A stretch of 64,000 bases of DNA, taken from the NCBI GenBank assembly GCA_946965045.2, contig OX337237.1, forward strand, positions 310,001-374,000. Direction: 5' to 3'. Below are positions 664-22,831 of the stretch, piece by piece. The notes below the pieces were generated by a model. The model did no database searches. It saw only the letters and a list, made by a program, of their open reading frames with translations, and was not told where the DNA came from. This DNA comes from Epithemia pelagica (Eukaryota > Protista > Bacillariophyta). Position numbers and translations under genes: made by a program. Numbering within the stretch: position 1 is the first letter of the stretch; the number at the start of each line of letters is the position of its first letter.

Positions 664-3600
664 ATGACCAAAAAGGGTCTTTTTCTTCGACAAACGTCGC
701 CTTGGAGGAGACGACGCGGGGCTCAGGACAAACGAATCCACTATGAGAAACTAGTAGAGGATTCTCCCACGGAACGCACAGTCGCATCATGGAGTGAAGG
801 GACCAGCGACGACCCACCCACGAAATCCAACAATGGTACGTACAAGACACACTGGATCCGAACTGTCGGCTCCATATTATCCATTGGTGCAATAAACTGT
901 TTGTTTTTGTTGTTGTTCCTCACGGATTCGGACAAACTCTGGTTTCCTTCTGGAAATTTGGGGGCGACTCTTTATTTTGTTCAGTGGATCCACGGCAGAT
1001 CATCCAAACCGTTCCAACCACGGATACCGAAGACAGCGAAAGCCACACGGAAGAGGGGCACGACGACACTCTGGACGCAGGTTCGTCGCCCAAGGAGGCT
1101 CGATTATTGGAAGCGACTCGACAAGACTTGGTACGATCCATTCACCGCCTGGAACGCAAGGTTCCATTCGACAGCCCGTGTCAACAGGCACAGGTGTCTC
1201 GTCGTCTCCACGACGTGCAACAGCAATTGCAGTCGTGTGTCGAGCAGTCGCTGAGGGCTCACACGGCGGCCGCCCCACGGGCACCACCCAAGGAATCCTG
1301 GCAGGCTGATGCCGTGGAAGAGTATCTGGGACCCTTGTTGGCACATGGGTTTGAATTTATCTCATCCAAGGATGCTCATGGATTGTGGACCAGTGGTGAC
1401 GAATTACCACCATTCCAATTCCACACGAATGGTCGACCCGTCTTTGTTGTCAATGTGTCCTTTTTGGTCGACTCGTCGTCGACATGCACCACCACCACCG
1501 TTTCCGAGGCACCACCATGGCCCCTACCGTCTTCCTCGTCGTCGTTGCATGGCCCATTGCAACCCCAACAATTACACGCACGATCCACGCCACGAAAAAA
1601 GCGTTCCTCGATCTATCGTTGGTGGACCAATCTCGAAGTGACACGTCAACTCGAAGCCGCACTCGAGCGAAAATTGGCCAATGACGCAGTCATTTCGATG
1701 CAAGATTGTCACTATTGGATTGTCCCTTTTTCTGCCTCATTGTCGTCGTCGTTGTCCAAAGAAGAAGAGGAAGAGGATGAAACCAATCTCTTGTGGTGCT
1801 GGTACGACCATCAATGGTCTCCCTGGTGTCCTCCCGAACCACCGGAACACGTGACGGCCACAGTGACCACGACCGAACTAGAGTTGGAATGGAGCATGGC
1901 GGACACCAGCAAGAAGAATAGTGTCGCGGTGTCACTCTTTTCCTGCCAGTCGTCGTCGCTGCTCCGAACGGTCACGAGTCAGTTTTCCTCCTGTTCCTGG
2001 ACCCACTTGGAACCTCGTACAGAATATCGAGTGGAACTGCGTGGCATTTCACGGATTCAAGGCGTTAGTACTCGTGCCGTGACCAAGCTTTTTCAAACGC
2101 CCAAAGCCTTGTCCTGGGCTCGACGCATTTATCAGTCCATTCATACCTCACAACAACAACAAGCGCATTCCGCCAAAAATGACATTGCGACCGTATTCGT
2201 GGAACCAGCAGTAGCCCTGGATCCCCATCCAACCGAATCACACCTACCACTCGAAGCAAGCCCGGTCGTACTCCAACTTGCCTGTCGGGTACACCACGTC
2301 GTACAATCCCAAGCATTTCATTTACCAGGCCAACCCATGGTCGATAGTATTCGAATCGTCGATGTGGCTCCGGGATTGGAACCCCACTATGAATTGGGCC
2401 CCATGGAACAGGCCTGGGTGTGTTTGTTGACGGGAGAAATGGGCGCGGGAAAGTCGACACATTTGAATGCCATGGTCAATTGGTTGTTTGGCGTCGAGTG
2501 GGATGACCCCTTTCGATTGCTATTAGTGGACGATTCGGAACAACGCACCGAGTCGGGAATCACGCCACAGAGTACCGTCTATCGCATTCGTCATTTGCCG
2601 GGCATGCCCGTGGACCAGAGCCTCATTCTCATTGATTCCCCGGGCTTTGCGGCTACTCCTCCAAGTCTCCAAACCGATCTGTTTACACGCGAATCGTTTC
2701 GTCAACTCTTTTCATTGCTGACTCATGTGAATTGTGTGGGATGGGTTCTTCCCGCGAACCGCAATCGATTGACCACGAGTTTTCAATACGTGATTCAAAA
2801 AGTACTGGAATTGTTGGATACCACACTCCAGGACAATCTTCTTCCAATTTGTACCTTTGCCGATGCTGGAATTCCTTCCTGTCTGGCCGCATTGGAAGAA
2901 GACACTGTGCCCTTTCGACATTACGTCAAGGTCCAAAATGGACCATTCTCGTGTCGACACATGATGAGGCGACGACACGTTGGACAAGAAGTCGACGGTA
3001 ATACGAATCCATTACACGAAACTCGTTCGTCTCATCAAGAAAAGCTCCATTGGGAGATAGCCTACAATGGCATTGCGTCCATGTTTCGCATTGTCGACCA
3101 TCACATGGTGTTGCGACCGTTGGACAAGAGCCTTGCAGTACTGGAAATTCGCCGAGGATTGCATCAGCAGTTACAAAGCGTGGTCCAAGAGCTTTGGACG
3201 ATCACGAATCAAGTTGTCTCTATTGTGCAAGATCTAGATAGGCTTCTCCAAACGCTTGGACAGTCACCGACCGAACCGATACTCCATAACCAGGGTAACG
3301 AGCTCGAACCGCCTCCAGAACAAGGGATTCAACAATGGAGTACCAACAAGCAGTGCCTAGAAGCGACGATTGCAAACAAACTCTCTGACTTGGACGAAAG
3401 ACAAGGTCGTCTCGTTACGCTATTGAGTGACTGTGTCAAAGTGCAGCAAAGCCTAGAGGGTAAAGGGTTGCGTAACAATCCCCGAGCTGCGGCCAACCAG
3501 TTGGACTCTTTGATCCGTGGCATGCTGGACCAAACCGAGAACAACATGCAAAAGGATTTCATGCTACATGGCTTGTACATGGCCAAACGTGAATTCGACT

Positions 3601-3983
3601 GCAAACTGGACAAGGAGCACAACAGTAATCGACAACGTGATATGCGTCGTTCGAAACAAGCCGCTCTTGTTTGCATTCGGCAGGAGTGGACACGCCGGTC
3701 TCAATTGGGACAGGAAGAACGGTTGCGAGAAGACACGGAACCCAGTGACTTTTACAATCAAGTTTTGTCTCTCCTGCCAAACGAATGCCACTCTCCTCTC
3801 CTACTACCAGCACCCCTTGGTCGGACTCATCTCGTTCGGGCTGAGCCCGAAACCGGCTACGAAGAGCGCAACTTTCCACCCTATCGGGAAAGCTTGATAA
3901 AGACGGCTCAGGCCCTACGACAATTGGTGTCTCGTTGGGATATGCCCCTGGTTGACGGAAACTCCCATCCAACGAACCAATAG
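664..3983 (+). CDS. FN3 + P-loop GTPase (AIG1/septin-like) + coiled-coil protein, paralog A; join(664..835,985..3983)
   Basis: ATG at 664; phase-1 intron 836-984 (G|GTACGT...TCAG) joins in frame to the 999-aa ORF. FN3-like segment (LELEWS...WTHLEPRTEYRVELRG), Walker A GEMGAGKS, G3 DSPG, TFAD motif, helical C-terminus. Confidence 0.85.
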
Positions 3984-4690
3984 TTCTACAAGTGAAGCAA
4001 TGCGAATATGAGAATCGTAAAGCTGTTCCCTGAAAGTTCATTCGCAAGCATGTGGCTCCAATAAGGCAAGACTTTGTATACCGGGGTAGCATACGGTTGA
4101 TGATGCCTCTTTGCTTGGATTTATGGTACTTTCATCGAATCCGGAGAGCCGAATAGACTTGTCTCGACTAGAGATGTCACTGAATTTCCCTCCACATCCG
4201 GGTTAGCACGTATTTCTCCACCATGGCGTCGGTCATAGCAGGACTGAAAGTGGGCGATGACGCTACAAGTCTTTCTTGAAAGAAGGACCGTTTACATCCT
4301 TGTGCGTCATCAGCATTCGGTGCAGAGTGTTTGCAATTTGCAATCAATGACGGTACGGAAGTACAAACGTGTTGCACCACGAATACATGCGGCGACTTGC
4401 TGCTGTTTGCGACTGAGAACGGTCCTGCACAGATCCTCGGCTTTTGTGTGAATTGACTCGTATCTCCTGCTTTGTTTGTCTCTAAAAGCTATTGGTTAAA
4501 CGTGTACCTTTGGTTGCGAAGTGCTCGCAAGTACTCTGCGTCACGACCCAGTCGCACACAGACTACGAACGCATGATTGAAACACGACACACCACTGCGG
4601 TGAGGTGATTGTCCTTCCACAACAACTTTCCTCTAATCAAACAAGCATCAGAGTCGAGAGAGCACCCATCACCGTAACAAAATCGCCGTT

Positions 4691-6050: not shown

Positions 6051-6752
6051 TTATGATCGCTCCATGACTTGCATGCTTTCCACTTGGTTCTTGATGCGCC
6101 GAGCTACTTGTTGACCTTCATTCTTTTTGAGACGCAAGATTTTGGCTCCTTCGGCTTTGGTCGTAATCACGACATGTTCCTGAGTATCTCCACAACAGCA
6201 TGTTTGCGCAATGCAATTCGGTGGCACCCCCTTGACGTCGGCATCGGTAATCTGCGACAAATCAACCGAGTCGATTTCATACTTGGGTCCACAGCAACAC
6301 GAGCAACAAGCAATGGGCCCAAATCGACAGGGATTGACAGTTTTGATCTCCAAGTGATTTCGTCGCAAGGAATATGTACTGGGATCATTGGGGCAACAGC
6401 CGCATCCAGTGGCACACAAGCGATGGACCCAGGAAAAGTACAAGACCTCTCGACCCTCCCATAGGACTTGTTCTCGTTGTTTCATGGCTTTGGATTGACG
6501 AAGAGTCTGCAAGGTTTCGCGGATACGAATTCGATCGCCGATACTCGATACACCCATTTCCCGGAGGTTTTGGTCCGTCAAATTGGGTGCCACCTCGCCT
6601 GTGATATCATTGGCAATAAACACTTCGCCATAATTTCCCAAACCCTTGCTCTCTAAATACGATGCCAACGCAGTAGAACTCCAATTGGACCAATCACGAG
6701 TTGATTCGGTTGTTGTAATATCGTTGACACTGTTTTTCTTGGTGCGAGTCAT
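6051..6752 (-). CDS. SAM-domain protein with cysteine-rich C-terminal domain
   Basis: 233-aa ORF. WSSTALASYLESKGLGNYGEVFIANDITGEVAPNLTDQNLREMGVSSIGDRIRI fits the SAM consensus; Cys clusters GCGCCP, CCSCCCG and TCCCG follow. Confidence 0.8.
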   Translation of the reverse strand: MTRTKKNSVNDITTTESTRDWSNWSSTALASYLESKGLGNYGEVFIANDITGEVAPNLTDQNLREMGVSSIGDRIRIRETLQTLRQSKAMKQREQVLWEGREVLYFSWVHRLCATGCGCCPNDPSTYSLRRNHLEIKTVNPCRFGPIACCSCCCGPKYEIDSVDLSQITDADVKGVPPNCIAQTCCCGDTQEHVVITTKAEGAKILRLKKNEGQQVARRIKNQVESMQVMERS

Positions 6753-7434: not shown

Positions 7435-9192
7435 CTACCGTTGGAGATTGCAGTCTCGGCTCGCATTGACAAATTCATCGCACCGGACACCCTGTAATTT
7501 CAAGGACGATCTTCCTCCTTGTTGTTGATGCGTTTGCACGAGTTCCAGTCCTTGGACCAACCCATTCACAGTCCCAACCGGCGTTTCGACATAATCTTTG
7601 TAAATGCGATAACACGCTTGTCGCATGCGACAGCGTTGTTCCAGAGAAATGGTGTCCAAATAGGCCAAGGTCGTGCGGCCGGCATCCTTTTCCGGAAGAA
7701 TCACGGCACACTCGGTCCAATTGACCAATTCGGGACGAAAGGGCCAGACCCAATCATCGGCATGCACCACGGGTATAGTACCAGCCGACAAGACTTCGGA
7801 AAAGCGGTACGAAAATTTATTGTCGCCTCGAGCCGCCAAGGCAAAGACGGCACGGGCCATGAATTGGGGATAGGAGTACTGTGACAGGGCGGACCGATTG
7901 AATTCGGCGGCAAGAAAATAGCGCGAGACAAAGATTCGTTGATTGTCATTAAGGTGTTGATAGGATCTTCTCGCTCCACCCCCATGACGACGATGAAAGT
8001 CTGCATTGGCACCGGATCGAAAATTTCCAGCGTAGACAAAGTAAAAGGGCCGATTGGTTTCGGCGGCACAGGTTTGAATGTCATGGACTTGTTGCCGTGT
8101 CAAGTGCGAGGGACGTGGCATGGGTGGGATCAATCCTTGATCACGATCCTCCTTGACATGCGAAATGAGGGAGGAGAGCGTGGCAATGGAAAGGTACGAG
8201 GCATTGGAGAGAGAGCCAGTGGTACGAATCTGCGGATTGCGCCCTCCACCCAAACCGTCTCCAGTACAATCCAACAAAATGGCCGTCGTGGGAAAACTAG
8301 CGAGGCGAAGCTTTTCAAAGGTTGGACTGGACCAGAGAGGATTCATTGGTTGTTCCAAGGGTGTCGTTCCGGTATGTCGAGTTCGGCGGGTGCCTCCTCC
8401 CAACAGTCGTCGACCAAAGGTGACATCCATATTTTGCTCCCCTCCCCCACCGTATATGGGGTAATTGGATTCTCCGCATTGAGGTTGATCCAAAAATATA
8501 TAAATGCGTGTCTGGGGAGGGAGTCTGGTGGTACTGTTGTTGTTGATGGTGGTGGCCAGGAGGGTTCTGTTCGAGCCTGCAGGTTGTTGTTGTTGTTGTT
8601 CTTGTCGTCGTCGTTTTCGTCCTTGTTGTGGTCGTTTCGGATAGACTTGATCCAGTTCGTTCCACAGGGTTGGATGAAACCATGGGTGGTTAATGACACC
8701 GGTCAACAGTTCGGTTTCCCGAATACTGCGAGGAATGGTCAAGGCCCATTGTTGATTGACATGATTCCATCCAAAACTCGTGAGCAAAATTACGGCTGGA
8801 GGAGGTGGTGCATTCGGATCCAACCAGGGACGGTGCACCTTTGGATCCCACTCCAAGGTCTTGTCCTGAACCAAGGAATGGGGCCACCAAACTGTCTTGT
8901 TATTGTTGTTGTTGTTCTTGTGGTAGCTGGTGGTGGTGTCGGAATCGTTGGAACCTGATGTGACTGTCACATTCTCATGAGCACGATGGTCCACCACAAG
9001 AATCGTATTGTTGTTATTGTTGCTGCTGCTGAGGGACGAGGACGACACTGCGGGAAATACATATCGAGACAACTCGACTCCAATTTGAAATTGCCATACC
9101 ACCGTAACACTGGCCAGTGCCAACCCCACAGTAAGAATGGTTCTTCTTCGTGTTCTTCTTCGTTGGAAGCAACAACAACGTCGATTCGTCAT
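7435..9192 (-). CDS. Exostosin-family (GT47) glycosyltransferase, copy 1
   Basis: Type II membrane anchor (RRRTILTVGLALASVTVVWQF). C-terminal FALAARGDNKFSYRFSEVLSAGTIPVVHADDWVWPF is typical of exostosin/GT47. Likely ATG at 9192. Confidence 0.85.
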   Translation of the reverse strand: MTNRRCCCFQRRRTRRRTILTVGLALASVTVVWQFQIGVELSRYVFPAVSSSSLSSSNNNNNTILVVDHRAHENVTVTSGSNDSDTTTSYHKNNNNNNKTVWWPHSLVQDKTLEWDPKVHRPWLDPNAPPPPAVILLTSFGWNHVNQQWALTIPRSIRETELLTGVINHPWFHPTLWNELDQVYPKRPQQGRKRRRQEQQQQQPAGSNRTLLATTINNNSTTRLPPQTRIYIFLDQPQCGESNYPIYGGGGEQNMDVTFGRRLLGGGTRRTRHTGTTPLEQPMNPLWSSPTFEKLRLASFPTTAILLDCTGDGLGGGRNPQIRTTGSLSNASYLSIATLSSLISHVKEDRDQGLIPPMPRPSHLTRQQVHDIQTCAAETNRPFYFVYAGNFRSGANADFHRRHGGGARRSYQHLNDNQRIFVSRYFLAAEFNRSALSQYSYPQFMARAVFALAARGDNKFSYRFSEVLSAGTIPVVHADDWVWPFRPELVNWTECAVILPEKDAGRTTLAYLDTISLEQRCRMRQACYRIYKDYVETPVGTVNGLVQGLELVQTHQQQGGRSSLKLQGVRCDEFVNASRDCNLQR

Positions 9193-9811
9193 TCCATAAT
9201 TTTGTGCTCTCTCTCTACTCCAAATGTCGGCAAACAATACCCTCTATGCAACAAGCAAGACAACAAGCAACAACATGGAACTAAGAAAGCGTTCCCATTG
9301 TCACAGTCACAGCGCCCACAAAAAAGCTATGCCTATATCTATATCAAATAGCTATGATCCTCTATTTGAGGTACTTCTATCCTAATACGACGTCTTTTGC
9401 AAGTGTGTTCTCGTCTCTCTCTCTAGACCTTTGCGAAACTCTCGAATCGAAACCAAAAAGGAAAGGAACATGGTTGTCGGAATAACACCATCCACTATTA
9501 TAATAGAAAGTATAGTGTTCCAAGTTCAGCGTGCCCGTCGTGAACCGTGACTCGTCCCTACCAAAACACCCGGGAGAGAGTCCACAACGAACCTGCATGT
9601 CACAGTGGATTGGATGATGAAACGTTGGACGAGCCGCTGGCTTTCTTGGCACTGCGACTCCTGCTGCTAGTAGGTACAAATACTCGGAAAACACACATCT
9701 TTCCTAGATACCAAAGGAAACGAAACTAGGCAGGCTACTAGTGTAGTAGTGGTACAAAGGTTCCGTTCCCTCGTCTCGTCCTCCTTCTACCGAGTGGTTT
9801 CTCCTCTACAT

Positions 9812-11479
9812 CTACCGTTGGAGATTGCAGTCTCGGCTCGGATTGACAAATTCATCGCACCGGACCCCTTGCAATTTTAATGGCGATCCTCCTTCGTGTC
9901 GTTGCGTTTGCAAGAGTTCCAGTCCTTGGACCAACCCGTGAATGGTTCCGACCGTGGTTTCGACATAGTCTTTGTAAATGCGATAACACGCTTGTCGCAT
10001 GCGACAGCGTTGTTCCACAGAAATCGTGTCCAAATAGGCCACGGTCGTCTTGCCGGCATCTTGTTCGGGACGAATGACGGCACACGCGGTCCAATTCACC
10101 AATTCGGGACGAAACGGCCAGACCCACTCATCGGCATGCACGACGGGAATGGCACCGGCCGACAAGACTTCGGAAAAGCGATAGGAAAATTTATTGTCCC
10201 CTCGCGCCGCCAAGGCAAAGACGGACCGGGCCAGGAATTGGGCATACGAGTACTTGGACAAGGCGGACCGATGGAATTCACTTGCATTGGAATAAGGCGT
10301 GACAAAGATTCGTTGATTGTCGTTCAGGGGTTGATACGAGGACCGTGCGCCACCGCCGTGTTGACGTTCAAAGTCGACATTGTTGCCATTGCGAAAATTG
10401 CCAGCATAGACAAAGAAAAAAGGCCGATTGGTTTCGGCGGCACACGTGGCAATATCGTGCACTTGTTGGTCCGTCAACTGACAAGGGTGGGGCATGGGTG
10501 GAACCAATCCTTGATCCACCTCTTCCTGGACATCTCTAATGAGGGACGACAGTGTCGCAATGGAAAGATAAGAGGCATTGGAGAGAAAGCCACTCACACG
10601 TCGTTGTTGTGGTTCCGGAAAGGCCCCCAACCCGTACCCATTGCAATTGAACAACAGGGCCATTGTGGAAAAGGTTTGGCGCAGCCGTGAAAAGGTCCGA
10701 CTGGTCCAAAGCGGATTGTGAGACGGCACCAAGGGTGTCACGTAGGGCGTGCCTCCTCCCGACGGTCGACCCAACGTGACATCCATGTTGGCTGGTCGGC
10801 CTCCATTGTAAATCGGGTAATTGGATTCCCCGCACTGCGGACGATCCAAAAACACATAGAGGCGTGTCGTCGTGTTGGGGAGCGGGAATCGGGTGGTCCT
10901 ACGGTTGGTGATGGGGCCTGGTGGTCGTCGTCGTCGTTTCTGATAGAGTTGCTCTAGTTCCTCCCATAGCGTGGGATGGAACCAGGGATGGTTGATGATA
11001 CCGGTAAACAATTCCGTTTCCCGAATACTGCGAGGAATGGTCCGGGCCCAAGTTTGATTCCAGTGATTCCATCCAAAACTGGTCAGCACAATCACGGCGG
11101 GAGGAGGTGGTGCATTCGGATCCAACCAGGGACGGTACACCTTTGGATCCCACTCCAAGGTTTGGTCCTGAATCAAGGAATGGGGCCACCAGACTGTCTT
11201 GTTCTTGTTGTGGTTGTTGTTCTTGTGGTTGGCAGGATGCTGGAGTGGGACGGCGGCCAGGGTTGTGGGATTGTGGATGGGATCCAGCCCCGGACGGTCC
11301 AACTCCACCGCAAGAAGGTTGCTGGACAACAACGACGACGACGACGAGGAATCCACCACCGAGAGGGACAATTCCAGTCCCAGTTGGAACTGCCATACCA
11401 ACGCCATGCTGGTAACAAGGGCCACACACACCAAAGTGGTTCGGGTGGTGTGAGAAAACAGTCTTGTGGTCGTCGTCAT
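9812..11479 (-). CDS. Exostosin-family (GT47) glycosyltransferase, copy 2 (tandem duplicate)
   Basis: Same architecture and near-identical C-terminus (FALAARGDNKFSYRFSEVLSAGAIPVVHADEWVWPF...CRMRQACYRIY) as copy 1. Likely ATG at 11479. Confidence 0.85.
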   Translation of the reverse strand: MTTTTRLFSHTTRTTLVCVALVTSMALVWQFQLGLELSLSVVDSSSSSSLLSSNLLAVELDRPGLDPIHNPTTLAAVPLQHPANHKNNNHNKNKTVWWPHSLIQDQTLEWDPKVYRPWLDPNAPPPPAVIVLTSFGWNHWNQTWARTIPRSIRETELFTGIINHPWFHPTLWEELEQLYQKRRRRPPGPITNRRTTRFPLPNTTTRLYVFLDRPQCGESNYPIYNGGRPANMDVTLGRPSGGGTPYVTPLVPSHNPLWTSRTFSRLRQTFSTMALLFNCNGYGLGAFPEPQQRRVSGFLSNASYLSIATLSSLIRDVQEEVDQGLVPPMPHPCQLTDQQVHDIATCAAETNRPFFFVYAGNFRNGNNVDFERQHGGGARSSYQPLNDNQRIFVTPYSNASEFHRSALSKYSYAQFLARSVFALAARGDNKFSYRFSEVLSAGAIPVVHADEWVWPFRPELVNWTACAVIRPEQDAGKTTVAYLDTISVEQRCRMRQACYRIYKDYVETTVGTIHGLVQGLELLQTQRHEGGSPLKLQGVRCDEFVNPSRDCNLQR

Positions 11480-12356
11480 GGTTGGCTGTGGTTGGCGAGA
11501 TTCCAACCATCCACGAGAGGGGATGATGCCTGTTGTTGGCGTTGTCGTGGAGGAACACGCTCGTCGTGTGAGTGTTTCGTTGGCTGTACCACAGAGAGTA
11601 TACGGAGGATCTATAGTAACGGATCAACGCGTCCCCCCAGTGTGCAAATCTGACGCCGCCTTTGTTGCAGAAAAGGAGAGACCAAAACGCAAGGTCGCTC
11701 GGCGCCGTCGCCCGACCAGCGTTCTAAACCAGTCTGAAGTGAGCGATTTCTTAGAGAACCAACCAAGAGCAGTACTTAGCATCGAGTTCCGTTGACTCGT
11801 TCTATAGTTAAGGCGTTTGATCTTGCACAAGATCAAAACTGCTCGATCAACCGTTCACTAAGAAACTCTCTAATAAATAATAATGGTCGCGAGTCGGCAC
11901 GTCGGAACCACGTGTGTGGAAAAACAGGATAACCATCACCCGTCACCAGCACCAGAGGTGAAAAGGCGATGACCATGACGCCGTCCCACCCCCACACAGT
12001 TTGTGTTGACAACGGTGGAACTAATGTCTGTGGTATCATCATCATCAAGCCTGCGGCAGCTAAGGAACCAGCCCCCACCCAAAAGCCCAACGAACATGCT
12101 CCACAAGGACGACCACGAGACGAATACAACGTTGACCAGCAGGAGGATGACACCCGCCATGGCAGCAGCTTGGTACCTCGAGGCGTGATAGAAAGGCATG
12201 GTTGCCTCACGAACGAATGCATGGTATGCAAGTTGTACGTGGCAATCCACGCGGTTCGCAATCGCGTGTCTAGAAAGAGACGATCGGTACAGCTCTTTTG
12301 GTGGCTCACAAATTATGGCCACTCCCAAACTCGCTCCGGACATGTACAGCACATTT

Positions 12357-12403: not shown

Positions 12404-12406
<3 letters not shown>

Positions 12407-14128: not shown

Positions 14129-14403
14129 AGATCCATTTCACCGGAAAGCCCAGACTCGTGACATCCTTCCTTTCTGAACCTTTCTTTCAAAGATACCATC
14201 TATGACAGAATCAGTACCAAGTCAGGGAACACAACACAGTCGGCAGCTTGCTTCCAAGTCACAGCAGAAGATCCATTTCACCGGAAAGCCCAGAGTCTTT
14301 CACCATCTTTCGCTAGATCCATTTCACCCGAAAACCCAGACTCTTGACAGCCATCTGCATCTTTCGCTAGATCCGTTTCACCCGAAAACCCAGACGCTTG
14401 ACA
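14129..14403. repeat. Four copies of a ~26-bp core AGATCC(A/G)TTTCACC(G/C)GAAA(G/A)CCCAGA; last two within a 54-bp tandem unit
   Basis: Cores start at 14129, 14269, 14315 and 14369. Confidence 0.85.
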
Positions 14404-14629
14404 TGCTGTTCTGTCAGCCTCTCATTTTTGTTCCAAGATACGATCTTTGGCAGAATCAATCCCTGTCATACCAACATGGGAAAAGTGCATATCCGAGCAG
14501 TACGAGAGTTGATTCGTCTCGCTTCAAAGTCGTAGCAGAAGTGAAGCAATCTCCATGTTGTCATAACTTTTTATCCTGGCCAAAGAAAACTTGAACGACG
14601 TACCAATTCCACCCAAGAACCCTAGTGGA

Positions 14630-17600
14630 ATGATACCGCCTGCATCGACGGGCGATGAAGAGAAGAAACACGACTTCACTGTTTTTGCATCTTCTGGTGG
14701 TGAGGATGAGAAACCATGCGACGGTACGTAACGCTCATGGAAACTGGGCTCAGATGGCGCAACGTATCGTGATGCAGTTTTCAAAATGATCGTACAGACC
14801 CTCCTCATCACTTGTCCTTCTATCCTATACATATACAGATCTAGCCGAACAGTTGGTCTCCGAACTCGAGAGTACCTTGCAGGAACTGAAAATGCTACAA
14901 TGCTCCAGAGGTGACGGACAAGGAAATGATACGAGGAAGTTTATTCTGGAGTTTAAGAGTGGGATGGATCGGTTGGTCCATCGTCTTCGTGAGAATCCAG
15001 GCCAGGAAATGAACGCTATTTCGCATGAAGTGGAATACTTTTGTGATAAGGCCAAGTTGTTTTTCCGAAATAAACAAGAAATGAACAAAGATGAATATGA
15101 AGGCTCTAGAGATGGTACGTAAGTATGCGCAACGGGTCGATTGTACCCGTTCAACATCTACTTTCACAATCTTGTACTGACACGCTGTCCCCTTCGATTC
15201 CTATATAGTGTTGGACGAAGAGTTGGTTACGAAACTCACGTTCATCTTGGACGAGTTAAAGAGCCTCCAACTCTCTATCCAGGAGGAACCCACCTATCAC
15301 GCTTTAGGGGAAGGTCTTTTTGAAGATGTGGCCAACTTTGTCCATGAATTTTCAAGTGGCATGGATCGGTTGGTGCAACATCCGCATCAAAGTCAGGAAA
15401 TTGACGATCCGGCTGCTGTTGTAGAACACTATCATGAGGTTGCCAGGTTGTTTCTGGAACACAAACGAAAAAGAATGGGTGCTCTGGATCAATACGTGCG
15501 TCCACTCCTCAAAAACGGATTTCGGTTGATGAAAGGTGACGCTCAAGCTTGTGACGACAAGGAAAGTGAGCAGCGTTCTTCCTCCTTTTATGTGAACTTG
15601 TCCCTTATGTATGACGAAGATAACACTGGCAACGAGCTTACTTCCGTGCTTAAACATCTCCCACACAAGACGAAAAAGAAAAAGAAGAGGAAGACGGTGA
15701 ATGAATCGATTGGCCGTAACATTAAGAAACAATACAAGTGGTGGACTGATGCTGAAGTGACGCATACCTTGGAGGAAGCGTTGACTCGCAAGCTGTGCAA
15801 CGATGGAGCAGATCTGATTGATTTCGAGTACTGGATTGGTCTTCTCTCACCACGCAAACAGGTTGTAGTCACAGATGATGATGATGAAGATGATGAGGAG
15901 GAAGAGGATAACGAAGATGGAGATGACGACAGCACTAACATGGAATTGTTTGAAAAGGAACTTCTCTTGCTGCAGTCCAAGACAGGAGAATGGTCCAAGT
16001 GGGAACCGCCATTGCTTTTTGAAAATGTACGCACTGTCGCTACTCCTAGTACCATTGTAGTCGAATGGGATTCACCATCGTGCTCCATGGATGGTAGTGC
16101 TGATTCGATGGATCAACATATCACTTCGCTGTTTCTCGCGGACGATGGCATCGGCAATCCGATCTTTCTCGACAGAAGTCTCGGCAAAACTGCAGGTTAT
16201 GTATGGACAGGCCTAGAGCATAATACGGAATACATTGTCGAGGTTCATGCATCTTCCGATACCCATGGAGTGAGCACGGAAAGCTCCAAGCTGACAGTCC
16301 GTACCGAAAAGGTGGTGTCCCTGGCCCGAAGAATCCATGGCTGTGTCAAGGATGGTTCCTCTGGCATTGGTACGATGCCGGGAACGGAAACGCTCCATTT
16401 GATTTCGTCTTTTTCGAGTTCCATCAAGTCAAAGGGGATTCACCTTCCCGGGCAAGCAACAGTCGATTGCGTCCGTTTTGTCGACGTGATTCCAGGTTTT
16501 GAACCCCAATACGAGTTTGGCAATATGGAAGATGCCTTGGTGTGCATTTTGACGGGAGAGACCGGTGCGGGGAAATCAACGCATTTGAATGCCATTGTCA
16601 ACTGGCTCTTTGGTGTTGAGCTGGAAGATCCCTTTCGACTTTTGTTGATTGATGATTCACATATGAAGGCCACAAGTTCTGTGACACAGCATATTACTGT
16701 GTATCGCATCCGTCATTTACCTGGAATGCCAATCGACAAGAGCCTCATGCTGATTGACTCTCCAGGCTACGCGGACTCAAGAAACCTCAAGGCTGATGAC
16801 TTTACCACGCATGCCTTCCGTCAATTGTTCAAAGAGATTAGTCACGTCAATTGCGTTGGACTTGTCATGAAGGCGTATAATGAACGACTGACGGCGAGTA
16901 CGAAATATGTGATTGAGAAGATGTTACAGCTGTTTGATACGAGTATCAAAGACAACATTCTTCCCATTTGCACGTTTGCGGACCATGGCGTGCCAACATG
17001 TTTGGAAGGATTGAAGTCGGACAATGTTTCGTTTCAGCATCATGTCAAGGTCCAGAATTCCATGTTCTCTTGTCGATATGTTCGCAGTCAAGGAGAAGCA
17101 GGACCGATGTCCTCGGCCTTGATGCAAGAACGTAAACTCTATTGGCAAATTGCGTATAACGGGATTTCTTCCATGTTTGACATTGTGTCTGACCACATGG
17201 TTCTTCGGCCGCTGGATAAGAGCTCCCGCGTTTTGGACCAGCGCCAGAAGCTTCAAGAAACATTGCAAGCAGTGATCCATGCACTTTCAGAAACAACGGC
17301 CGATGTTGCAAATATACTGCAGCAGCTTAACTTTATGGTTAATGTTTTGGGAAATGTTCCCACCGAAAAGGTCAAGGTGAAGAAATCCGAGAGTGTCAAA
17401 ACTGATCTTCCGACGGGCGTCCATGTTACTTTGTGTTCCAAGTGCAATGTAACATGTCACATGGGATGCCGAATCCCAAATGATCAGGATAAGGCGAGAT
17501 GTTGTGCCATGGACAAGTCTGGGAACTGTCGTGTGTGTCCTGGCAAGTGTTATTGGACGCATCACCACAACGCTGAGTACTACTGGGAGGTGAAGACGAG

Positions 17601-18302
17601 AGTTGAAGAAGTGGTTCCAGAGGAACTTATCAAGAGGTGAGTCATAAGTGTATGTAGATTGGAAAAATGACCATTCCCTCCAATCTTCTTCTTCTGACCG
17701 TACTGCCTTACGCTTGATGATAATCGGAACGGCAAAGGTGGGCTGGAGAGAATGGTTCGCATGAAGCTGCAATCTTGAATGGATTGAAACAGTGGGAGGA
17801 AAAACAGCAACATGTGCTGAATCTTTTGAATCTTTGTGTTTCACTACAAGAAGAGCTTCAAGTCAAGAGCCTTCGGAACAACCCACGTGTAGCTTTGGCC
17901 TATGTCGAGTCGTTGATTGAAATGCAAAAAGACCGGGGAGCAACAGATGATGTGTTACAAGCATTGCATCAAGCCAAGAAACAGCTTCGCCTCCAGGATG
18001 AAAGTAAGCGTCAACGTGATATAAACGCAGCAAACAAGAACGCTTTTGAATGCATTAAAGATGAACTGGACCGTCGATCTAAGTTGCCTCCTCGCCAGAG
18101 GTTGATGGAAGAAAACCAGCCGAGTGACTTCTACAATGAAGTTCTGAATTATGTTCCACGAGAATACCGTCGCGATCTTCCTCCTCCGTTGAAGATTTCC
18201 AATCATTGGATTTGTGGAGCGCAGAGTTACCCCCCGTTTCGTGAAAGTCTGAAAAAGACTGGGCTGGCCTTGAAGACACTTTTAAGCATGGGAGTGTCGT
18301 AG
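14630..18302 (+). CDS. FN3 + P-loop GTPase + Cys/His-rich domain + coiled-coil protein, paralog B; join(14630..14723,14839..15114,15209..17636,17738..18302)
   Basis: Three GT-AG introns (14724-14838, 15115-15208, 17637-17737) each restore the frame. GETGAGKS, DSPG, TFADHG and CSKCNVTCHMGC...CCAMD...CRVCPGKCYWTHHHN are present. Start codon uncertain. Confidence 0.85.
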
Positions 18303-19528
18303 GGGCGGTCATGTGATTTTCCTTTTGTGGTGCTGTCAGCGGAACAGAGAAAAAAAATCGACAGCAATATAGTCTGGAGGCCAATGAAACAAGAATTTAT
18401 CTGTCGTATTTACTTCAGCACTCTATGAGAGTAACTAATATTTTCAAGCGACATGGTGATTTTCCTAGATGGTCGCTCCGTGTTTTGGGCTTTGAGTGTC
18501 CAGTGTCCAGAGAAATGCGGACTCGCACATGCCTTGCAGTTGCATAAAAGGACGACTATGTGGTTTCATAGACTGAGGCTTTTCTCTTGTAACGTCGCCT
18601 TTCCGGGTCAGGACCAGTCATTCATATTGTTTGGCGCCGTAAGTCGAGAGTGTCCCATGGTCTTGGGGCTCTATAGGTAGGCTCTATAGGTAGATGTGTA
18701 GAGCTATCTTCCGGTGCTGGGATACTATGATTTATGATAGTAAGATAGAATATAGGTAGTTCTGATAGTGTCGTAGTTTCCTAGCGTTGCAATATGTACT
18801 GGTTCAATACAACACAAACAATATGTAAGACTATGGACCGTTGGGATTTACAGCCACAAAGGTGCGGATAAAAAGGGTCGACCATCGACCATGAGATGAC
18901 GTTCTCGTAACCCAACGAGAATCGCAGCCTTCTTGTAGAGATGCGGAGCATGTTTGTGCGTTTGGGTATGAATGTTTGTCCAACAATAAGGAGCTGTCCA
19001 AGCGCGATAGACGAATTCGCTGAACGTTTGCCGTGACACGTTTTTTCTGTCGCGCTCGTCGACTATACTTCCAGTACCTCCTGAGAAGGGAACCGAGACA
19101 CGTTTCTCTCGCATGTTCCCCTCAGATTCTCCTCTCGTCGCAACTTGTCTTGTCGCAACTTGTCTTGGAAAGAACTGTTGTTGTGTCTTGATCAAGCGTC
19201 GTCATCGTATTGCCCCGTCCAATCGCACACAAGGAAACTGTGGATTGCTCTGGACGTCCCAAATGGTTTCTCCCATGACGAGAACTGCGGAGATTTCATG
19301 GTCCCGAAAAGGCAGAGAAAAGTGTCCACGACCAAGACACTTTGCGAATTCAAACAAAGGAAACTTCAAACCCGTCGCTAGTTCAGGTTGAATCAGACGG
19401 AACAAGAGATGGTGTGCGATCGAGAAAGAGAGTTGGTGCTCTCCACTCATAAAAAGTAAAGTCGCAGACTGGAATCGATCAAACTTTGCAAGCAATACTT
19501 ACTTTTACACTTTGAACTTTGTTGAACC

Positions 19529-22500
19529 ATGTTGCGTCGCGTCTTAAAACAACACCGTGAGAAACGTCGCCAACGCCGCATGGCGGCCCAACCCCATCCA
19601 ACTGCTGGTAACGTTCCAGCAGATCCTGTATCGAGCAAGGAAAAAGATCCCCTGGATGTGACTCTCAATCCTTCTTCGTCCTCTGATGACGGTGAAATGG
19701 AAGGCCCTCCAGCCGGTACGTAGACACAAACAGAGACACCTTTTGTGAGACGTTCTTCATCATCTTGTACTGACACTTGCAATCACTCTCTTTTTTCTGT
19801 ATCAATTCCTTTTCACAGTAGTATTGGACCAAGAGTTGGTTGCCAAGCTTGAGTTTGTCTGGAACGAGCTCAAGATCCTGCAACGTTCCATCCAAGACGA
19901 ACCCACGTATCGCGCTCTCGGACCAGGCCTCGGTGTCGATGTGGCCAACTTTGTTCTGGAATTTTCCCATGGCATGGACCGATTGATGCAACAACCACCT
20001 CAACAACAACCGGGAATGGACGACCCGACGGTGGTTGTGGAACACTATTGCGATATTGCCAAGTTGTTTCTCAAAAACAAACGCAAAGAAATGAATGCTC
20101 TCGATCAATTCGTGGGTCCACTCCTGGACCATGGATTTCAATTGGTGGACGAAGAAGGCAATCGTCAAGACCAGGAACAGTGCTCTTCCTCCTTTCATGT
20201 GAACTTGTCCCTGTTGTACGATTCAGATAATTTCGGCAACGATCTGGCTTCTCAACTGAACCATCTGCCTACTCAAACGGCCGGACGCAAGAACAAGAAG
20301 CAGTACAAGTGGTGGACCGATGCAGAAGTGACGCATACCTTGGAGGAAGCATTGACTCGCAAGCTGTGCAACGATGAAGCCAATCGGATTGAGTTCCAGT
20401 ACTGGATTGGTCTTCCATCAACGGCGGGGCGACTAGGATGCACGGATGATAACGACGACGACAATGATAACGACGGTGGCGACAAGATCGACACCAACAC
20501 GGACTTGTTTGACGAGGAACTTCTCTTGTTGCGCACCAAGACGGGAAAATGGTCCAGGTGGGAACCGCCGTTGCCTTTTGAAAATGTACGCACTGTCGCA
20601 ACCCCTAGTACTATTGTAGTTGAGTGGGATTCGCCGCCATGCTCCGTGGATGGAAATGTTGGTTCGATGGACCAACATATCATTTCGCTGTTTCTCGCAG
20701 ACGATGGCAGTGGCGATCCAATTTTTCTCGAGAGAAGTGTCGGCAAAACTGCAGGTTGTGTATGGACAGGCCTAGAGCATAATACGGAGTACGTTGTCGA
20801 GGTTCATGCATCTTCCGATACCCATGGAGTGAGCACGGAAAGCTCCAAGCTGACAGTCCGTACCGAAAAGGTGGTGTCCCTGGCCCGAAGAATCCATGGC
20901 TGTGTCAAGGATGGTGCCTCTGGAATTGGTACAATGCCGGGAACGGAAACGCTCCATTTGTTTTCTTCCTTTTCGAGTTCCATCAAGTCAAAGGGGATTC
21001 ACCTTCCGGGACAACCAACGGTCGATTGCGTCCGTTTTGTCGACGTGATTCCCGGTTTTGAACCCCAATACGAGTTTGGCAATATGGAAGATGCCTTGGT
21101 GTGCATTTTGACGGGAGAGACCGGTGCGGGGAAATCAACGCATTTGAATGCCATTGTCAACTGGCTCTTTGGTGTTGAGCTGGAAGATCCATTTCGCCTA
21201 TTGTTGATTGATGATTCACATATGAAGGCCACGAGTTCTGTGACACAGCATATCACCGTGTATCGCATCCGTCATTTACCTGGAATGCCCATCGACAAGA
21301 GCCTCATGCTGATTGACTCTCCAGGCTACGCGGACTCGAGAAACCTCAAGGCTGATGACTTTACCACGCATGCCTTCCGTCAATTGTTCAAAGAGATTAG
21401 TCACGTCAATTGCGTTGGACTTGTCATGAAGGCGTATAATGAACGCCTGACGGCGAGTACGAAATATGTGATTGAGAAGATGTTGCAGTTATTTGATACG
21501 AGTATCAAAGACAACATTCTTCCCATTTGCACCTTTGCGGACCATGGCGTGCCAACATGCTTGGAGGGATTGAAGTCGGACAATGTTTCTTTCCAACATC
21601 ATGTCAAGGTCCAGAATTCAATGTTCTCTTGTCGATATGTTCGCAGTCAAGGAGAAACAGGGCCAATGTCCTCGGCGTTGATGCAAGAGCGCAAGCTATA
21701 CTGGCAAATTGCGTATAACGGAATCTCTTCCATGTTTGACATTGTGTCTAACCACATGGTTCTTCGTCCATTGGATGCCAGTAGCCTCATTTTGGAAAAA
21801 CGGCAGTTGCTTCAAGAAACATTGCAAGCTGTGATACATGCGCTTTCAGAAACAACAGCCGATGTGGCCAACATTATGCAACAGTTGAACTTTTTGGTCA
21901 ATATTCTGGGAGAAGTTCCAACTGACAAGGTTACTGTGACAAAGTCTGAAAGTGTCAAAACTGATCTTCCGACGGGCGTCCATGTTACTTTGTGTTCCAA
22001 GTGCAATGTAACATGTCACATGGGATGCCGAATCCCAAATGATCAGGATAAAGCGAGATGTTGTGCCATGGACAAGTCTGGGAACTGTACTGTGTGTCCT
22101 GGCAAATGTCATTGGACACATCACCACAATGCTACTTACTACTGGGAGGTGAAAACGAGAGTCGAAGAAGTGGTTCCGGAAGAACTGATCAAAAGGTGAG
22201 TCACATGTGTATCGGATCGGAGACGATCTCTCTTGTTCTTCTTACCATAATTCTTTATCTACAAAGGTGGGCTGGAGAGAATGGTTCGCATGAAGCAGCG
22301 ATCTTAAATGGATTGAAACAGTTGGAGGAGAAACAGCAACATGTGGTCGATCTTTTAAATCAATGCGTCTCACTGCAAAAAGAGCTCCAAGTCAAGAGTC
22401 TTCGGAACAATCCTCGTGTAGCGTTGGCCTATGTTGAATCTTTGATTGAAATGCAAAAAGACCGTGGAGCCACAGATGATGTGCTGCAGGCTTTGCATCA

Positions 22501-22831
22501 AGCAAAGAAACAGCTTCGCCTCCAGGACGAGAGTAAGCGTCAACGCGATATCTACAAAGCAAACAAAACGGCGCTTCAATGTATCAAAGCTGAGTTGAGC
22601 CGTCGATCTCAGTTGCCGTATCTCGAGAGATTGATGGAAGAGAACCAGCCGAGCGACTTCTACAATCAAGTTCTCAAACAAGTCCCGCGAGAATATCGTC
22701 GCCAGCTTCCTCCTCCGTTGAAGGCATCCAATCAGTGGTTCTCTGGAGGCCAGAGTTACCCTCCCTTTCGTGAAAGTCTGAAAAAGACTGGACTGGCCTT
22801 GACCACCCTTTTGCGGATGGGAGTGTCGTAA
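19529..22831 (+). CDS. FN3 + P-loop GTPase + Cys/His-rich domain + coiled-coil protein, paralog C; join(19529..19715,19819..22195,22267..22831)
   Basis: Introns 19716-19818 (G|GTACGT...CAG) and 22196-22266 (AG|GTGAGT...AAG) restore the frame. Motifs as in paralog B. Confidence 0.88.

What the first reader, a model, noticed from the sequence alone, without database searches (positions are those of the whole stretch)
664..22831. Cluster of three FN3 + AIG1/septin-like GTPase + Cys/His-finger genes: candidate innate-immunity-like module
Seen: three paralogs with a variable N-terminus, an FN3-like domain, a P-loop GTPase (GExGAGKS, DSPG, TFAD), in two copies a CxxC-x3-CH-x2-C...CC...CxxC-x3-C-x3-H domain, and a helical/coiled-coil tail. 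All share a phase-1 first intron. Established: AIG1/GIMAP-class GTPases act in cell-autonomous defence in plants and animals and typically occur as fast-evolving tandem clusters. Inference: a lineage-expanded sensor/effector GTPase family in a diatom, with a conserved enzymatic core and a hypervariable N-terminus. I know of no functional description of this architecture in diatoms.
Basis: partly seen in the sequence, partly recalled or inferred. Interest (0 to 1): 0.78.

Follow-up and report, generated by a model that had tools for sequence, protein, structure and literature searches.

The report
Headless stonustoxin-like GTPase gene trio
Three neighbouring diatom genes encode large GTP-switch proteins from a widespread, unstudied family that in many other organisms carries a stonefish-toxin-type pore-forming head, which the diatom copies have lost.

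Summary
Three intact paralogous genes lie on the + strand: A at 664-3983, B at 14630-18302 and C at 19529-22831. Each has a helical N-terminus, an FN3 domain, a GTPase (GExGAGKS / DSPG / TFAD) and a helical tail. B and C also have a Cys/His module. A spliced contig confirms C's phase-1 first intron.

Three things are new.
- The GTPase is closest to GIMAP/AIG1, Toc34 and septins, but it misses Pfam's AIG1 threshold.
- GTPase, stalk, Cys/His module and tail form one conserved unit. It occurs in thousands of uncharacterised proteins from fish, corals, sponges, molluscs and fungi, and apparently in filamentous cyanobacteria.
- The region before FN3 matches the helical and thioredoxin-like domains of stonustoxin. 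About a third of the top relatives carry a stonustoxin-type MACPF head, including proteins from a red alga, a fungus, an acoel and a sponge. The diatom clade nests among them without a head.

The immunity reading is only partly supported. It rests on association, not on tests:
- dN/dS is below 1 in every domain.
- There are only three copies, syntenic in a related assembly.
- B and C are homogenised by gene conversion across the G domain.

I found no paper on this family, and the scan had not noted it before.

The parts
664..835 (+). Gene A exon 1: ATG at 664, 57 codons plus 1 base, a basic N-terminal peptide
   Evidence: Sequence read directly: GTACGT donor at 836, phase 1. No hydrophobic signal peptide.
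836..984 (+). Gene A intron 1 (phase 1, GT..AG), predicted
   Evidence: Not checked with reads.
985..3983 (+). Gene A main exon. It holds the helical, a/b, FN3, GTPase, stalk and tail parts. It has no Cys/His module and no 3' intron.
   Evidence: ORF (protein P0008). Alignment A1. FN3 at about 1839-2057 (Pfam). G1 2433-2456, G3 2634-2651, G4 2850-2864.
14130..14394 (+). Four copies of a 25-nt direct repeat, 240-500 bp upstream of gene B's predicted ATG. This may be a cis-element; its function is unknown.
   Evidence: 4 matches against 0 expected.
14630..14723 (+). Gene B exon 1 (predicted; 31 codons plus 1 base)
   Evidence: GTACGT donor at 14724. Not checked with reads.
14839..15114 (+). Gene B exon 2: an extra copy of the first helical (stonustoxin-helical-like) segment
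   Evidence: tblastn of P0001 residues 2-88 gives 37% identity, E 8.6e-9. Open frame, phase 1 on both sides.
15209..17636 (+). Gene B main exon (protein P0001). Domains: helical bundle about 15217-15513; thioredoxin-like a/b about 15520-15840; acidic disordered about 15856-15954; FN3 about 15964-16302; G domain about 16483-17127; stalk; Cys/His module 17434-17565.
17637..17737 (+). Gene B 3' intron (phase 2, GTGAGT..AG)
   Evidence: An X3 contig starts exactly at 17738. The junction reads ...ELIKR|WAGENGSH, as in the intronless Epithemia homologue P0004.
17738..18302 (+). Gene B last exon: helical tail
   Evidence: 67% identical to the P0004 tail. Covered by an X3 contig spanning 17738-18614.
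19529..19715 (+). Gene C exon 1: 62 codons plus 1 base, basic peptide MLRRVLKQHREKRR..., similar to the start of Epithemia P0004
19716..19818 (+). Gene C intron 1 (phase 1, 103 nt), confirmed as spliced out
   Evidence: A 1593-nt X3 contig skips exactly this stretch, GT..AG.
19819..22195 (+). Gene C main exon (protein P0002). FN3 at about 20523-20861, G1 21114-21137, G3 21315-21332, G4 21528-21542, Cys/His module 21993-22124.
22196..22266 (+). Gene C 3' intron (phase 2)
   Evidence: An X3 contig joins about 22195 to the start of a last exon. It was placed on B's near-identical exon start, so which gene it comes from is ambiguous.
22267..22831 (+). Gene C last exon: helical tail
16168..17067 (+). 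Gene-conversion tract in B. It pairs with 20727-21626 in C and covers the end of FN3, the linker and the G domain.
   Evidence: DNA identity is 92-99% here, against 70-78% upstream and about 80-87% downstream. dS is 0.19 here, against 0.87-0.89 in the flanking domains.

Best explanation
Identity (well supported). A, B and C encode soluble multidomain GTPases of about 1,000 residues, with no signal peptide and no membrane span. The domain order is:
- a short variable leader;
- a stonustoxin-type helical (FAT-like) domain;
- a stonustoxin-type thioredoxin-like domain;
- FN3;
- a G domain of the GIMAP/AIG1-Toc-septin clade;
- a helical stalk;
- a Cys/His, presumably zinc-binding, module (lost in A);
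- a helical tail.

They belong to a widespread, uncharacterised family. Its canonical form starts with a stonustoxin-type MACPF pore-forming head. The diatom clade has lost that head.

Mechanism (inferred). GIMAPs, septins and Toc34 dimerise or polymerise through their G domains when GTP is bound. I take this G domain to be the same kind of assembly switch. In the full-length relatives it would gate oligomerisation of the perforin-like heads. In the diatom proteins it would build GTP-dependent homo- or hetero-oligomers, with a B-C pair the obvious candidate. The helical, thioredoxin-like and FN3 part would bind partners, and the Cys/His module and tail would dock to a target. I take the most likely role to be cell-autonomous defence or cell-death signalling, as a scaffold, sensor or regulator rather than an executioner.

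Gene conversion keeps the G domains of B and C identical while the N-termini and stalks diverge.
For: Genes and motifs.

Splicing and transcription of C, and of B's last exon.

G-domain class:
- Pfam MMR_HSR1 scores 22.7 against a threshold of 21.9; AIG1 scores 22.9 against 27.
- Family profile against PDB: septins 1e-7, GIMAP4 7e-7, Toc34 4e-4.
- AF2 model, pLDDT 88.7.
- Foldseek: GIMAP7 4e-8, then GIMAP2 and Toc34.
- VIA-align: Toc33 Z 14.6, GIMAP7 Z 13.8.

Conserved GTPase-to-tail unit:
- 3,700 representatives at E<=1e-3 and 864 at <=1e-30, mostly matching profile positions 460-910.
- The Cys/His motif lies about 295 residues after the P-loop in most of the top 150.
- Whole-unit structural matches in the ESM Atlas, TM 0.62-0.67 over about 430 residues, in chordate, mollusc and basidiomycete clusters.

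Stonustoxin link:
- P0006 against 4wvm, E 3.6e-24.
- P0036 against 4wvm, E 7e-17.
- Profile of the pre-FN3 region against 4wvm_A residues 279-505, E 3.8e-27.
- Diatom-only profile against a profile of distant head-bearing members: hhalign 95.6%, E 1.3e-8. Those members hit Pfam Stonustoxin_helical (15 of 23) and Thioredoxin_11 (11 of 23).
- One relative scores above Pfam thresholds for MACPF_SNTX, Stonustoxin_helical, Thioredoxin_11, fn3, Septin and AIG1 in that order.
- About 50 of the 150 top hits carry the head.

Head loss: the diatom clade (support 97) nests inside head-bearing clades (support 100). There is no MACPF remnant in the window.

Selection and conversion.

No transmembrane segment or signal peptide.

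Established knowledge used: GIMAP GTPase activity is stimulated by dimerisation (PMC8857920). [quoted passage not shown] The stonustoxin domain order is MACPF-FAT-THX-PRYSPRY (PMC10566576).
Against: - No functional data exist for any family member that I could find.
- The defence role rests on association with a perforin-like head that these diatom copies lack.
- dN/dS is below 1 everywhere. The cluster is small and syntenic between two assemblies. That also fits a conserved cellular role.
- AIG1 is below Pfam's threshold.
- GTP binding, oligomerisation and zinc binding are untested.
- The homology of the diatom N-terminus to stonustoxin domains needs profile-profile or transitive evidence. 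The diatom-only profile found nothing in PDB, and it scored only 0.3% against one single sequence.
- The fold of residues 1-215 could not be searched on its own.
- The module model is of the Epithemia homologue, not of a window protein.
Confidence: 0.5

Rival explanations
1. They are simply divergent GIMAP/AIG1 GTPases. They would do what GIMAPs are thought to do, which is organelle or membrane homeostasis, autophagy and survival control. The extra domains would be adaptors, and the perforin connection would have no bearing on function.
For: The best structural neighbours are GIMAP7, GIMAP2 and Toc34. The profile hits GIMAP4 and GIMAP7. AIG1 is the top or near-top Pfam family. Helical segments follow the G domain, as in GIMAPs. 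Selection is purifying.
Against: - AIG1 is below the gathering score in B and C and absent in A.
- The G domain is inseparable from a stalk, Cys/His module and tail that GIMAPs lack.
- The whole-length homologues are stonustoxin-like fusions.
- Septins score as well as GIMAPs by sequence profile.
Confidence: 0.2
2. They are housekeeping septin-like or dynamin-like scaffolds for membrane or cytoskeleton remodelling, for example in division or valve formation. They would have no role in conflict.
For: Septins are the top sequence-profile hits (1e-7). The long helical stalk and tail recall dynamin-like proteins, with a LeoA match in Foldseek, though TM is only 0.19. Gene order is conserved in a related assembly. 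dN/dS is low.
Against: - The distribution is patchy. By word search, only Epithemia and a few unnamed assemblies hold close relatives.
- Copy number differs between species.
- One paralogue has lost the Cys/His module.
- The family is repeatedly fused to a pore-forming head.
- Cyanobacterial relatives sit beside STAND NTPases and dynamin-like genes.
- No Pfam Septin hit occurs in the diatom proteins.
Confidence: 0.12
3. They are decaying remnants of a former perforin-like toxin or effector gene family and no longer do anything.
For: The head is missing. Gene A has also lost the Cys/His module and shows relaxed constraint (dN/dS 0.38 overall, with segments at 0.6-1.0 on few substitutions). The main exon of B's counterpart in the related assembly starts later, without the helical segment in frame.
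Against: - All reading frames are open over 790-1,000 codons.
- The GTPase motifs are intact in all three.
- dN/dS is 0.01-0.08 in the G domains of B and C.
- Headless orthologues persist in Epithemia and two other assemblies.
- Spliced transcript-like contigs exist.
Confidence: 0.05

Closest known systems
GIMAP / AIG1 (IAN) GTPases (Pfam PF04548; human GIMAP2, GIMAP7 structures 2xtp, 3zjc)
   Same: TRAFAC G domain of the GIMAP-septin clade. Best fold matches (Foldseek 4e-8; Z 13.8). G1, G3 and a T-x-x-D type G4. An R-L-T element between G3 and G4 sits where GIMAPs have their conserved box. Helical segments follow the G domain. Genes occur in tandem clusters.
   Different: Below the AIG1 gathering score. 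About 1,000 residues, with stonustoxin-like helical and thioredoxin-like domains and FN3 in front, and an obligatory stalk, Cys/His module and tail behind. No C-terminal membrane anchor.
Stonustoxin / SNTX-like perforin family (PDB 4wvm; MACPF-FAT-THX-PRYSPRY)
   Same: The helical (FAT) and thioredoxin-like domains are homologous and in the same order. Full-length relatives also share the MACPF head (E 1e-17 to 1e-24). No signal peptide.
   Different: The diatom genes have no MACPF head. PRYSPRY is replaced by FN3, GTPase, Cys/His module and tail. There is no evidence of toxicity or pore formation.
Uncharacterised 'Septin-type G / AIG1-type G domain-containing' proteins. Examples: Porphyridium purpureum KAA8494090.1 (named 'Neoverrucotoxin subunit beta'), Xylaria nigripes KAI2624052.1, Convolutriloba macropyga XP_075264058.1, Epithemia clementina KAL7570472.1, and many fish, coral, sponge and mollusc proteins. 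Some Atlas clusters carry Pfam DUF8206.
   Same: Same GTPase-stalk-Cys/His-tail unit (E down to 1e-130 for non-diatom members). Many have the same full spacer of helical, thioredoxin-like and FN3 domains. This is the family the window genes belong to.
   Different: Most of the close clade carry the MACPF head. Others have tandem G domains or other N-terminal parts. The diatom clade is headless, and gene A also lacks the Cys/His module.
Septins and Toc34/Toc33
   Same: Same GTPase clade: septin profile hits at 1e-7, Toc33 at Z 14.6. These are GTPases that act by G-interface dimerisation.
   Different: No Pfam Septin hit in the diatom proteins. The septin unique element was not tested. The proteins are not membrane-anchored translocon receptors.

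Membership tests
GIMAP / AIG1 (PF04548) | AIG1 domain at or above Pfam's gathering score (27 bits) | tested here: not met
   B and C score 22.9 bits and A has no AIG1 hit. Epithemia P0004 scores 24.9. More distant family members do pass, for example 29.3 and 32.4 bits.
GIMAP / AIG1 (PF04548) | G1, G3 and G4 nucleotide-binding motifs intact | tested here: met
   GE(T/M)GAGKS, DSPG and CTFAD are present in all three genes. P-loop G/K, T, DxPG and TF-D are invariant or nearly so across 72 family members.
GIMAP / AIG1 (PF04548) | Helical or coiled-coil segment after the G domain (the traditional definition, PMC8857920) | tested here: met
   The AF2 model of the homologue has long helices at 216-293 and 398-504. 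No coiled-coil predictor was run.
GIMAP / AIG1 (PF04548) | G domain fold closest to solved GIMAPs | tested here: met
   Foldseek ranks GIMAP7 first, 4.2e-8. VIA-align gives GIMAP7 Z 13.8, tied within 1 with Toc33 (14.6) and EngB (13.3).
Stonustoxin-like (SNTX) perforin family | N-terminal MACPF/CDC (MACPF_SNTX) pore-forming domain | tested here: not met
   No diatom protein matches the head in a phmmer search with the head of P0006. tblastn of nine heads against the window gives nothing below E 0.1.
Stonustoxin-like (SNTX) perforin family | Helical (FAT) domain followed by a thioredoxin-like (THX) domain | tested here: met
   hhalign of the diatom-only profile against distant head-bearing members gives 95.6%, E 1.3e-8 over 173 columns. 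Against P0006 it gives 99.35%. The family profile matches 4wvm_A 279-505 at 3.8e-27. Caveat: the diatom-only profile alone does not reach 4wvm.
Stonustoxin-like (SNTX) perforin family | C-terminal PRYSPRY domain | tested here: not met
   No SPRY or PRY hit. FN3 and the GTPase occupy that position.
Septin (PF00735) | Septin domain above the Pfam threshold; septin unique element | tested here: not met
   No Septin hit at E<=1 in A, B or C, although relatives pass. The septin unique element was not examined.
GTPase-stalk-Cys/His-tail family (unnamed; some members carry Pfam DUF8206) | G domain, then the Cys/His motif C-x2-C-x3-CH-x2-C...C-x2-C-x3-C-x-W-x2-H about 295 residues after the P-loop, then a conserved helical tail | tested here: met
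   B and C have a P-loop at 450 and 431 and the motif at 743 and 724. The unit is matched as one stretch in hundreds of proteins and as one fold. Gene A meets all but the Cys/His motif. DUF8206 itself is not in the Pfam copy at hand, so its extent is untested.

The most novel reading that the evidence does not exclude
The GTPase-stalk-Cys/His-tail unit is a nucleotide-gated assembly switch for stonustoxin-type perforin pores, conserved from filamentous cyanobacteria to animals. It would be an unrecognised class of intracellular, GTP-controlled pore-forming immune executioner. The headless diatom trio would then be derived regulators, such as decoys, inhibitors or sensors, that co-assemble through a G interface kept identical by gene conversion.
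Probability: 0.15. Interest if true: 0.85.

Novelty: new variant of a known kind. Interest (0 to 1): 0.6.

Why it matters
Two protein families usually discussed apart are physically joined here: AIG1/GIMAP-like GTPases and stonefish-toxin-type perforins. They occur as one large protein family across eukaryotes, and I found no paper on it.

If the GTPase gates assembly, it would give a testable mechanism for controlling perforin-like pores from inside a cell. It would also give GIMAP-like GTPases, whose mode of action is still unclear, a concrete job.

For diatoms, these genes are candidates for the poorly known cell-autonomous defence or cell-death machinery. The B/C pair is also a clean example of gene conversion preserving one domain while the others diverge.

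Tried and rejected
- Single-sequence search of B's main exon against PDB found only noise.
- NCBIfam found nothing.
- The diatom-only N-terminal profile against PDB gave no stonustoxin hit. Against one single head-bearing sequence it gave 0.3% probability. The link needed profile-profile comparison and the nearest head-bearing relative.
- Fold searches with the 430-residue N-terminal model were filled by FN3 matches.
- Fold searches of the 580-residue module reported only the G domain. I make no claim about the stalk or Cys/His fold being new or known.
- Positive selection was looked for with Nei-Gojobori dN/dS by domain on six sequences. Nothing exceeded 1 except a few-substitution segment of gene A.
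- The prokaryote scan gave ten loci.
  - Two, labelled Nitrospirales and Heliomicrobium MAGs, encode the complete eukaryote-like architecture.
  - The Nitrospirales locus has only four ORFs of at least 100 aa in 11 kb. I suspect mis-binned eukaryotic DNA and draw nothing from either locus.
  - Two cyanobacterial loci look genuine.
- Literature searches for DUF8206, stonustoxin with GTPase, GIMAP with diatom, and AIG1 with MACPF found no description.
- No run on record as RNA holds the locus. Expression evidence is one run's spliced contigs.
- The padloc and phrogs libraries were not searched.
Full report
**1. What is there**

The + strand of window 664-22831 carries three long open frames: 984-3983, 15208-17640 and 19824-22199. 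Two shorter downstream frames encode matching C-terminal tails. tblastn with family members finds exactly these three copies in the 64 kb.

Gene models were read from the sequence.

| Gene | Exons | Introns |
|---|---|---|
| A | 664-835; 985-3983 | 836-984 (phase 1) |
| B | 14630-14723; 14839-15114; 15209-17636; 17738-18302 | 14724-14838 and 15115-15208 (phase 1); 17637-17737 (phase 2) |
| C | 19529-19715; 19819-22195; 22267-22831 | 19716-19818 (phase 1); 22196-22266 (phase 2) |

- B's second exon is an extra, diverged copy of the first helical segment (37% identity, E 8.6e-9).
- All exon frames are open. None has a signal peptide or a membrane span.
- The intervening 10 kb holds unrelated genes on the other strand: a SAM-domain ORF and two GT47 glycosyltransferases. 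A BTB/RCC1-like gene follows C.

**2. Expression**

No run on record as RNA holds the locus. One run (X3, kind not recorded) has three informative contigs:
- a 1,593-nt contig that removes 19716-19818 exactly at GT..AG;
- a contig that begins exactly at 17738;
- a contig that joins about 22195 to the start of a last exon.

So C's first intron and a 3' junction are spliced as predicted, and C and B's last exon are transcribed. The 5' exons of A and B are predictions only.

**3. Domains**

*Pfam.* On the single exons Pfam gives only weak hits:
- fn3, E 5e-4 to 1e-2;
- AIG1, 22.9 bits against a threshold of 27;
- MMR_HSR1, 22.7 bits against 21.9.

*FN3.* Family profiles settle the FN3 question.
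- A profile against PDB matches single FN3 chains down to 7.6e-12.
- An AF2 model of B residues 1-430 has a mean pLDDT of 72.7.
- Its residues 266-369 superpose on fibronectin and DCC FN3 domains at Z 14.0, rmsd 1.5 A.

*G domain.* G1, G3 and G4 are intact in all three genes.
- A 72-sequence profile hits septins (1e-7), GIMAP4 (7e-7) and Toc34 (4e-4).
- I modelled residues 405-984 of the intronless Epithemia clementina homologue P0004 rather than joining window exons. P0004 is 74% identical to B and C over the G domain, stalk and Cys/His module, and 67-72% over the tail.
- That model has pLDDT 88.7 and pTM 0.77.
- Foldseek ranks GIMAP7 first (4.2e-8), then GIMAP2 and Toc34.
- VIA-align gives Toc33 Z 14.6, GIMAP7 13.8, EngB 13.3 and GIMAP4 13.2.

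The G domain therefore belongs to the GIMAP/AIG1-Toc-septin clade, but it does not pass Pfam's AIG1 test.

**4. A conserved GTPase-to-tail unit**

A profile of the eight closest proteins was searched against 1.84 billion representatives.
- It found 3,700 proteins at E<=1e-3 and 864 at <=1e-30.
- Most match profile positions about 460-910, which cover the G domain, the stalk, the Cys/His module and about 85 tail residues.
- The motif C-x2-C-x3-CH-x2-C...C-x2-C-x3-C-x-W-x2-H lies about 295 residues after the P-loop in most of the top 150. Its Cys and His residues are at least 90% conserved in a 72-member alignment.
- Named members are all 'uncharacterized' or 'Septin-type G domain-containing'. 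They come from cichlids and other fish, corals, sponges, a crab and others.
- ESM Atlas clusters with the same whole-unit shape (TM 0.62-0.67 over about 430 residues) come from chordates, molluscs and basidiomycetes. Some clusters carry Pfam DUF8206.
- Gene A lacks about 70 residues exactly at the Cys/His module, as does its orthologue in a related assembly.

**5. The stonustoxin link**

*Relatives with a head.*
- The nearest non-diatom relative, P0006 from a metagenome, has an extra N-terminus. That N-terminus matches stonustoxin alpha residues 5-372 at E 3.6e-24.
- P0036 matches stonustoxin beta at 7e-17.
- About 50 of the top 150 family members carry this MACPF head.
- They include proteins from Porphyridium purpureum (deposited as 'Neoverrucotoxin subunit beta'), Xylaria nigripes, Convolutriloba macropyga and Oscarella pearsei, and a Selenidium transcriptome.

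*The region before FN3.*
- A 30-sequence profile of the region between head and FN3, diatoms included, matches stonustoxin alpha 279-505 at 3.8e-27.
- That range covers stonustoxin's helical (FAT) and thioredoxin-like domains, as those domains are listed in PMC10566576.
- One relative scores above Pfam thresholds for MACPF_SNTX, Stonustoxin_helical, Thioredoxin_11, fn3, Septin and AIG1, in that order.

*The diatom proteins themselves.*
- A diatom-only profile aligns to P0006 at 99.35%.
- It aligns to a profile of 23 distant head-bearing members at 95.6%, E 1.3e-8, over 173 columns.
- Those 23 members hit Stonustoxin_helical (15 of 23) and Thioredoxin_11 (11 of 23).
- The diatom-only profile does not reach 4wvm directly. 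It also fails against one single sequence.
- The AF2 model of B shows a three-helix bundle (4-102) followed by a small a/b domain (105-211). That fits, but the fold was never searched alone.

**6. Loss of the head**

- In a FastTree of the GTPase-to-tail unit, the diatom sequences form a clade with support 97. The clade holds A, B, C, two Epithemia proteins and one from a third assembly.
- That clade sits inside an 11-member clade (support 100) with head-bearing proteins. The 11-member clade sits inside a 22-member head-bearing clade (support 100).
- No diatom protein and no part of the window matches a head.
- The simplest reading is that the diatom lineage lost the head. Short basic leaders replace it in A, C and Epithemia P0004, a repeat array in P0005, and a duplicated helical exon in B.
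- The tree is quick and unrooted, so this is an inference.

**7. Evolution of the trio**

A related assembly (ENA ERZ21939226, contig ctg1233l) has the same order: A, two GT47 genes, B, C, BTB.

Nei-Gojobori estimates by domain are all below 1, except for a few-substitution stretch of gene A:
- N-terminus and FN3: 0.2-0.3.
- G domain: 0.01-0.08 in the B/C-type pairs (0.28 between the two A orthologues).
- Gene A against its orthologue: 0.38 overall.

B against C is a mosaic.

| Region | dS, B vs C |
|---|---|
| N-terminus | 0.87 |
| FN3, linker, G domain | 0.19-0.25 |
| Stalk | 0.89 |
| Cys/His module | 0.28 |

- The G domain is 100% identical in protein between B and C.
- DNA identity jumps to 92-99% over B 16168-17067.
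- B's FN3-to-G part is closer to the other assembly's C than to its B.

This is gene conversion, not hypervariability driven by selection. A is the deepest diatom branch, so the split of A from B/C predates the split from Epithemia.

**8. Bacterial relatives**

A pattern scan of prokaryote genomes gave ten loci.
- Two encode the complete eukaryote-like architecture. One of them sits in sparsely coding DNA, so I set both aside as possibly mis-binned.
- A Pseudanabaena contig has ordinary cyanobacterial neighbours. It encodes a dynamin-N domain plus an AIG1/septin-like GTPase, with eight Cys starting 293 residues after the P-loop, next to a second dynamin-like gene.
- An Oscillatoria contig has a similar GTPase beside an NB-ARC/NACHT ATPase.
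- This fits the AIG-type GTPases reported in conflict systems of multicellular prokaryotes (PMC7159879). I did not pursue it further.

**9. Interpretation**

*Shown:*
- gene structure, in part;
- transcription of C;
- domain identities;
- family membership;
- absence of the head;
- purifying selection;
- gene conversion.

*Inferred:*
- The G domain acts as a GTP-dependent dimerisation or oligomerisation switch, by analogy with GIMAP, septin and Toc34. GIMAP activity is stimulated by dimerisation (PMC8857920).
- In full-length relatives the switch gates assembly of the perforin-like head.
- The headless diatom proteins act as scaffolds, sensors or regulators in cell-autonomous defence or death signalling.

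The defence role is guilt by association. Stonustoxin-like proteins are suspected ancestral defence molecules (PMC12107551), and AIG-type GTPases are immunity-linked. The small, stable, purified cluster argues for caution.

**10. Novelty and limits**

- I found no paper on this family or on DUF8206.
- The scan's own notes hold nothing like it.
- The parts are known kinds: an AIG1-like GTPase, stonustoxin domains and FN3. Their union is in databases but unstudied, and the diatom genes are a headless variant.
- All searches used single exons by reference, and the intronless natural homologue P0004 stood in for the spliced module.

Noticed in passing
window 14130-14394 (+): Four copies of a 25-nt direct repeat (GATCCRTTTCACCSGAAARCCCAGA), spaced 46-140 bp, lie 240-500 bp upstream of gene B's predicted start. 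None occurs elsewhere in the window (0 expected by chance). This may be a cis-regulatory array or a repeat remnant.
   Followed up: partly
window 14839-15114 (+): Gene B carries an extra exon that is a diverged duplicate of the first about 90 residues of its own main exon, the stonustoxin-helical-like segment. It is flanked by phase-1 introns. This is exon duplication in the most variable part of the protein. Its splicing is unverified.
   Followed up: partly
window 16168-17067 paired with 20727-21626: There is a sharp-edged gene-conversion tract between B and C: 92-99% DNA identity against 70-87% outside it. It covers the G domain. B here is closer to the other assembly's C than to its B in this part.
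   Followed up: yes
window 23123-24070 (-) and 24096-26372 (-): A BTB/BACK ORF is directly followed on the same strand by an RCC1-repeat ORF. This is probably one RCC1-BTB (RCBTB-like) gene next to gene C. The BTB neighbour is conserved in the related assembly.
   Followed up: no
window 6054-6752 (-), 7438-9237 (-), 9815-11506 (-): A SAM-domain ORF and two tandem GT47 exostosin-like glycosyltransferase genes separate gene A from B. The two GT47 genes hold the same position in the related assembly.
   Followed up: partly
window 53217-54536 (-) and 59087-63970 (-): There is an ORF with an AAA_16 (STAND-like) ATPase hit, and a 1,628-aa Copia-type (RVT_2) retrotransposon ORF near the window's end.
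   Followed up: no
L007 3381-8893 (Pseudanabaena MAG) and L012 1790-6449 (Oscillatoria princeps MAG): Cyanobacterial proteins have the same G domain plus a Cys cluster about 295 residues after the P-loop. One is fused to a dynamin-N domain and followed by a second dynamin-like gene. The other sits beside an NB-ARC/NACHT ATPase. This suggests a prokaryotic origin or counterpart of the GTPase-Cys/His unit.
   Followed up: partly
L005 2967-6533 ('Nitrospirales' MAG, 1.3-Mb contig) and L009 2841-6737 ('Heliomicrobium' MAG): Complete MACPF_SNTX-helical-thioredoxin-FN3-GTPase-Cys/His proteins are encoded on contigs labelled bacterial. The L005 stretch has only four ORFs of at least 100 aa in 11 kb. 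This could be mis-binned eukaryotic DNA or gene transfer.
   Followed up: partly
L014 6001-9564 (ENA ERZ25042306): The headless homologue P0005 from a third diatom-like assembly has about 250 N-terminal residues of tandem acidic, His-rich repeats where other members have the MACPF head. It sits among RVT_2 retroelement ORFs.
   Followed up: no
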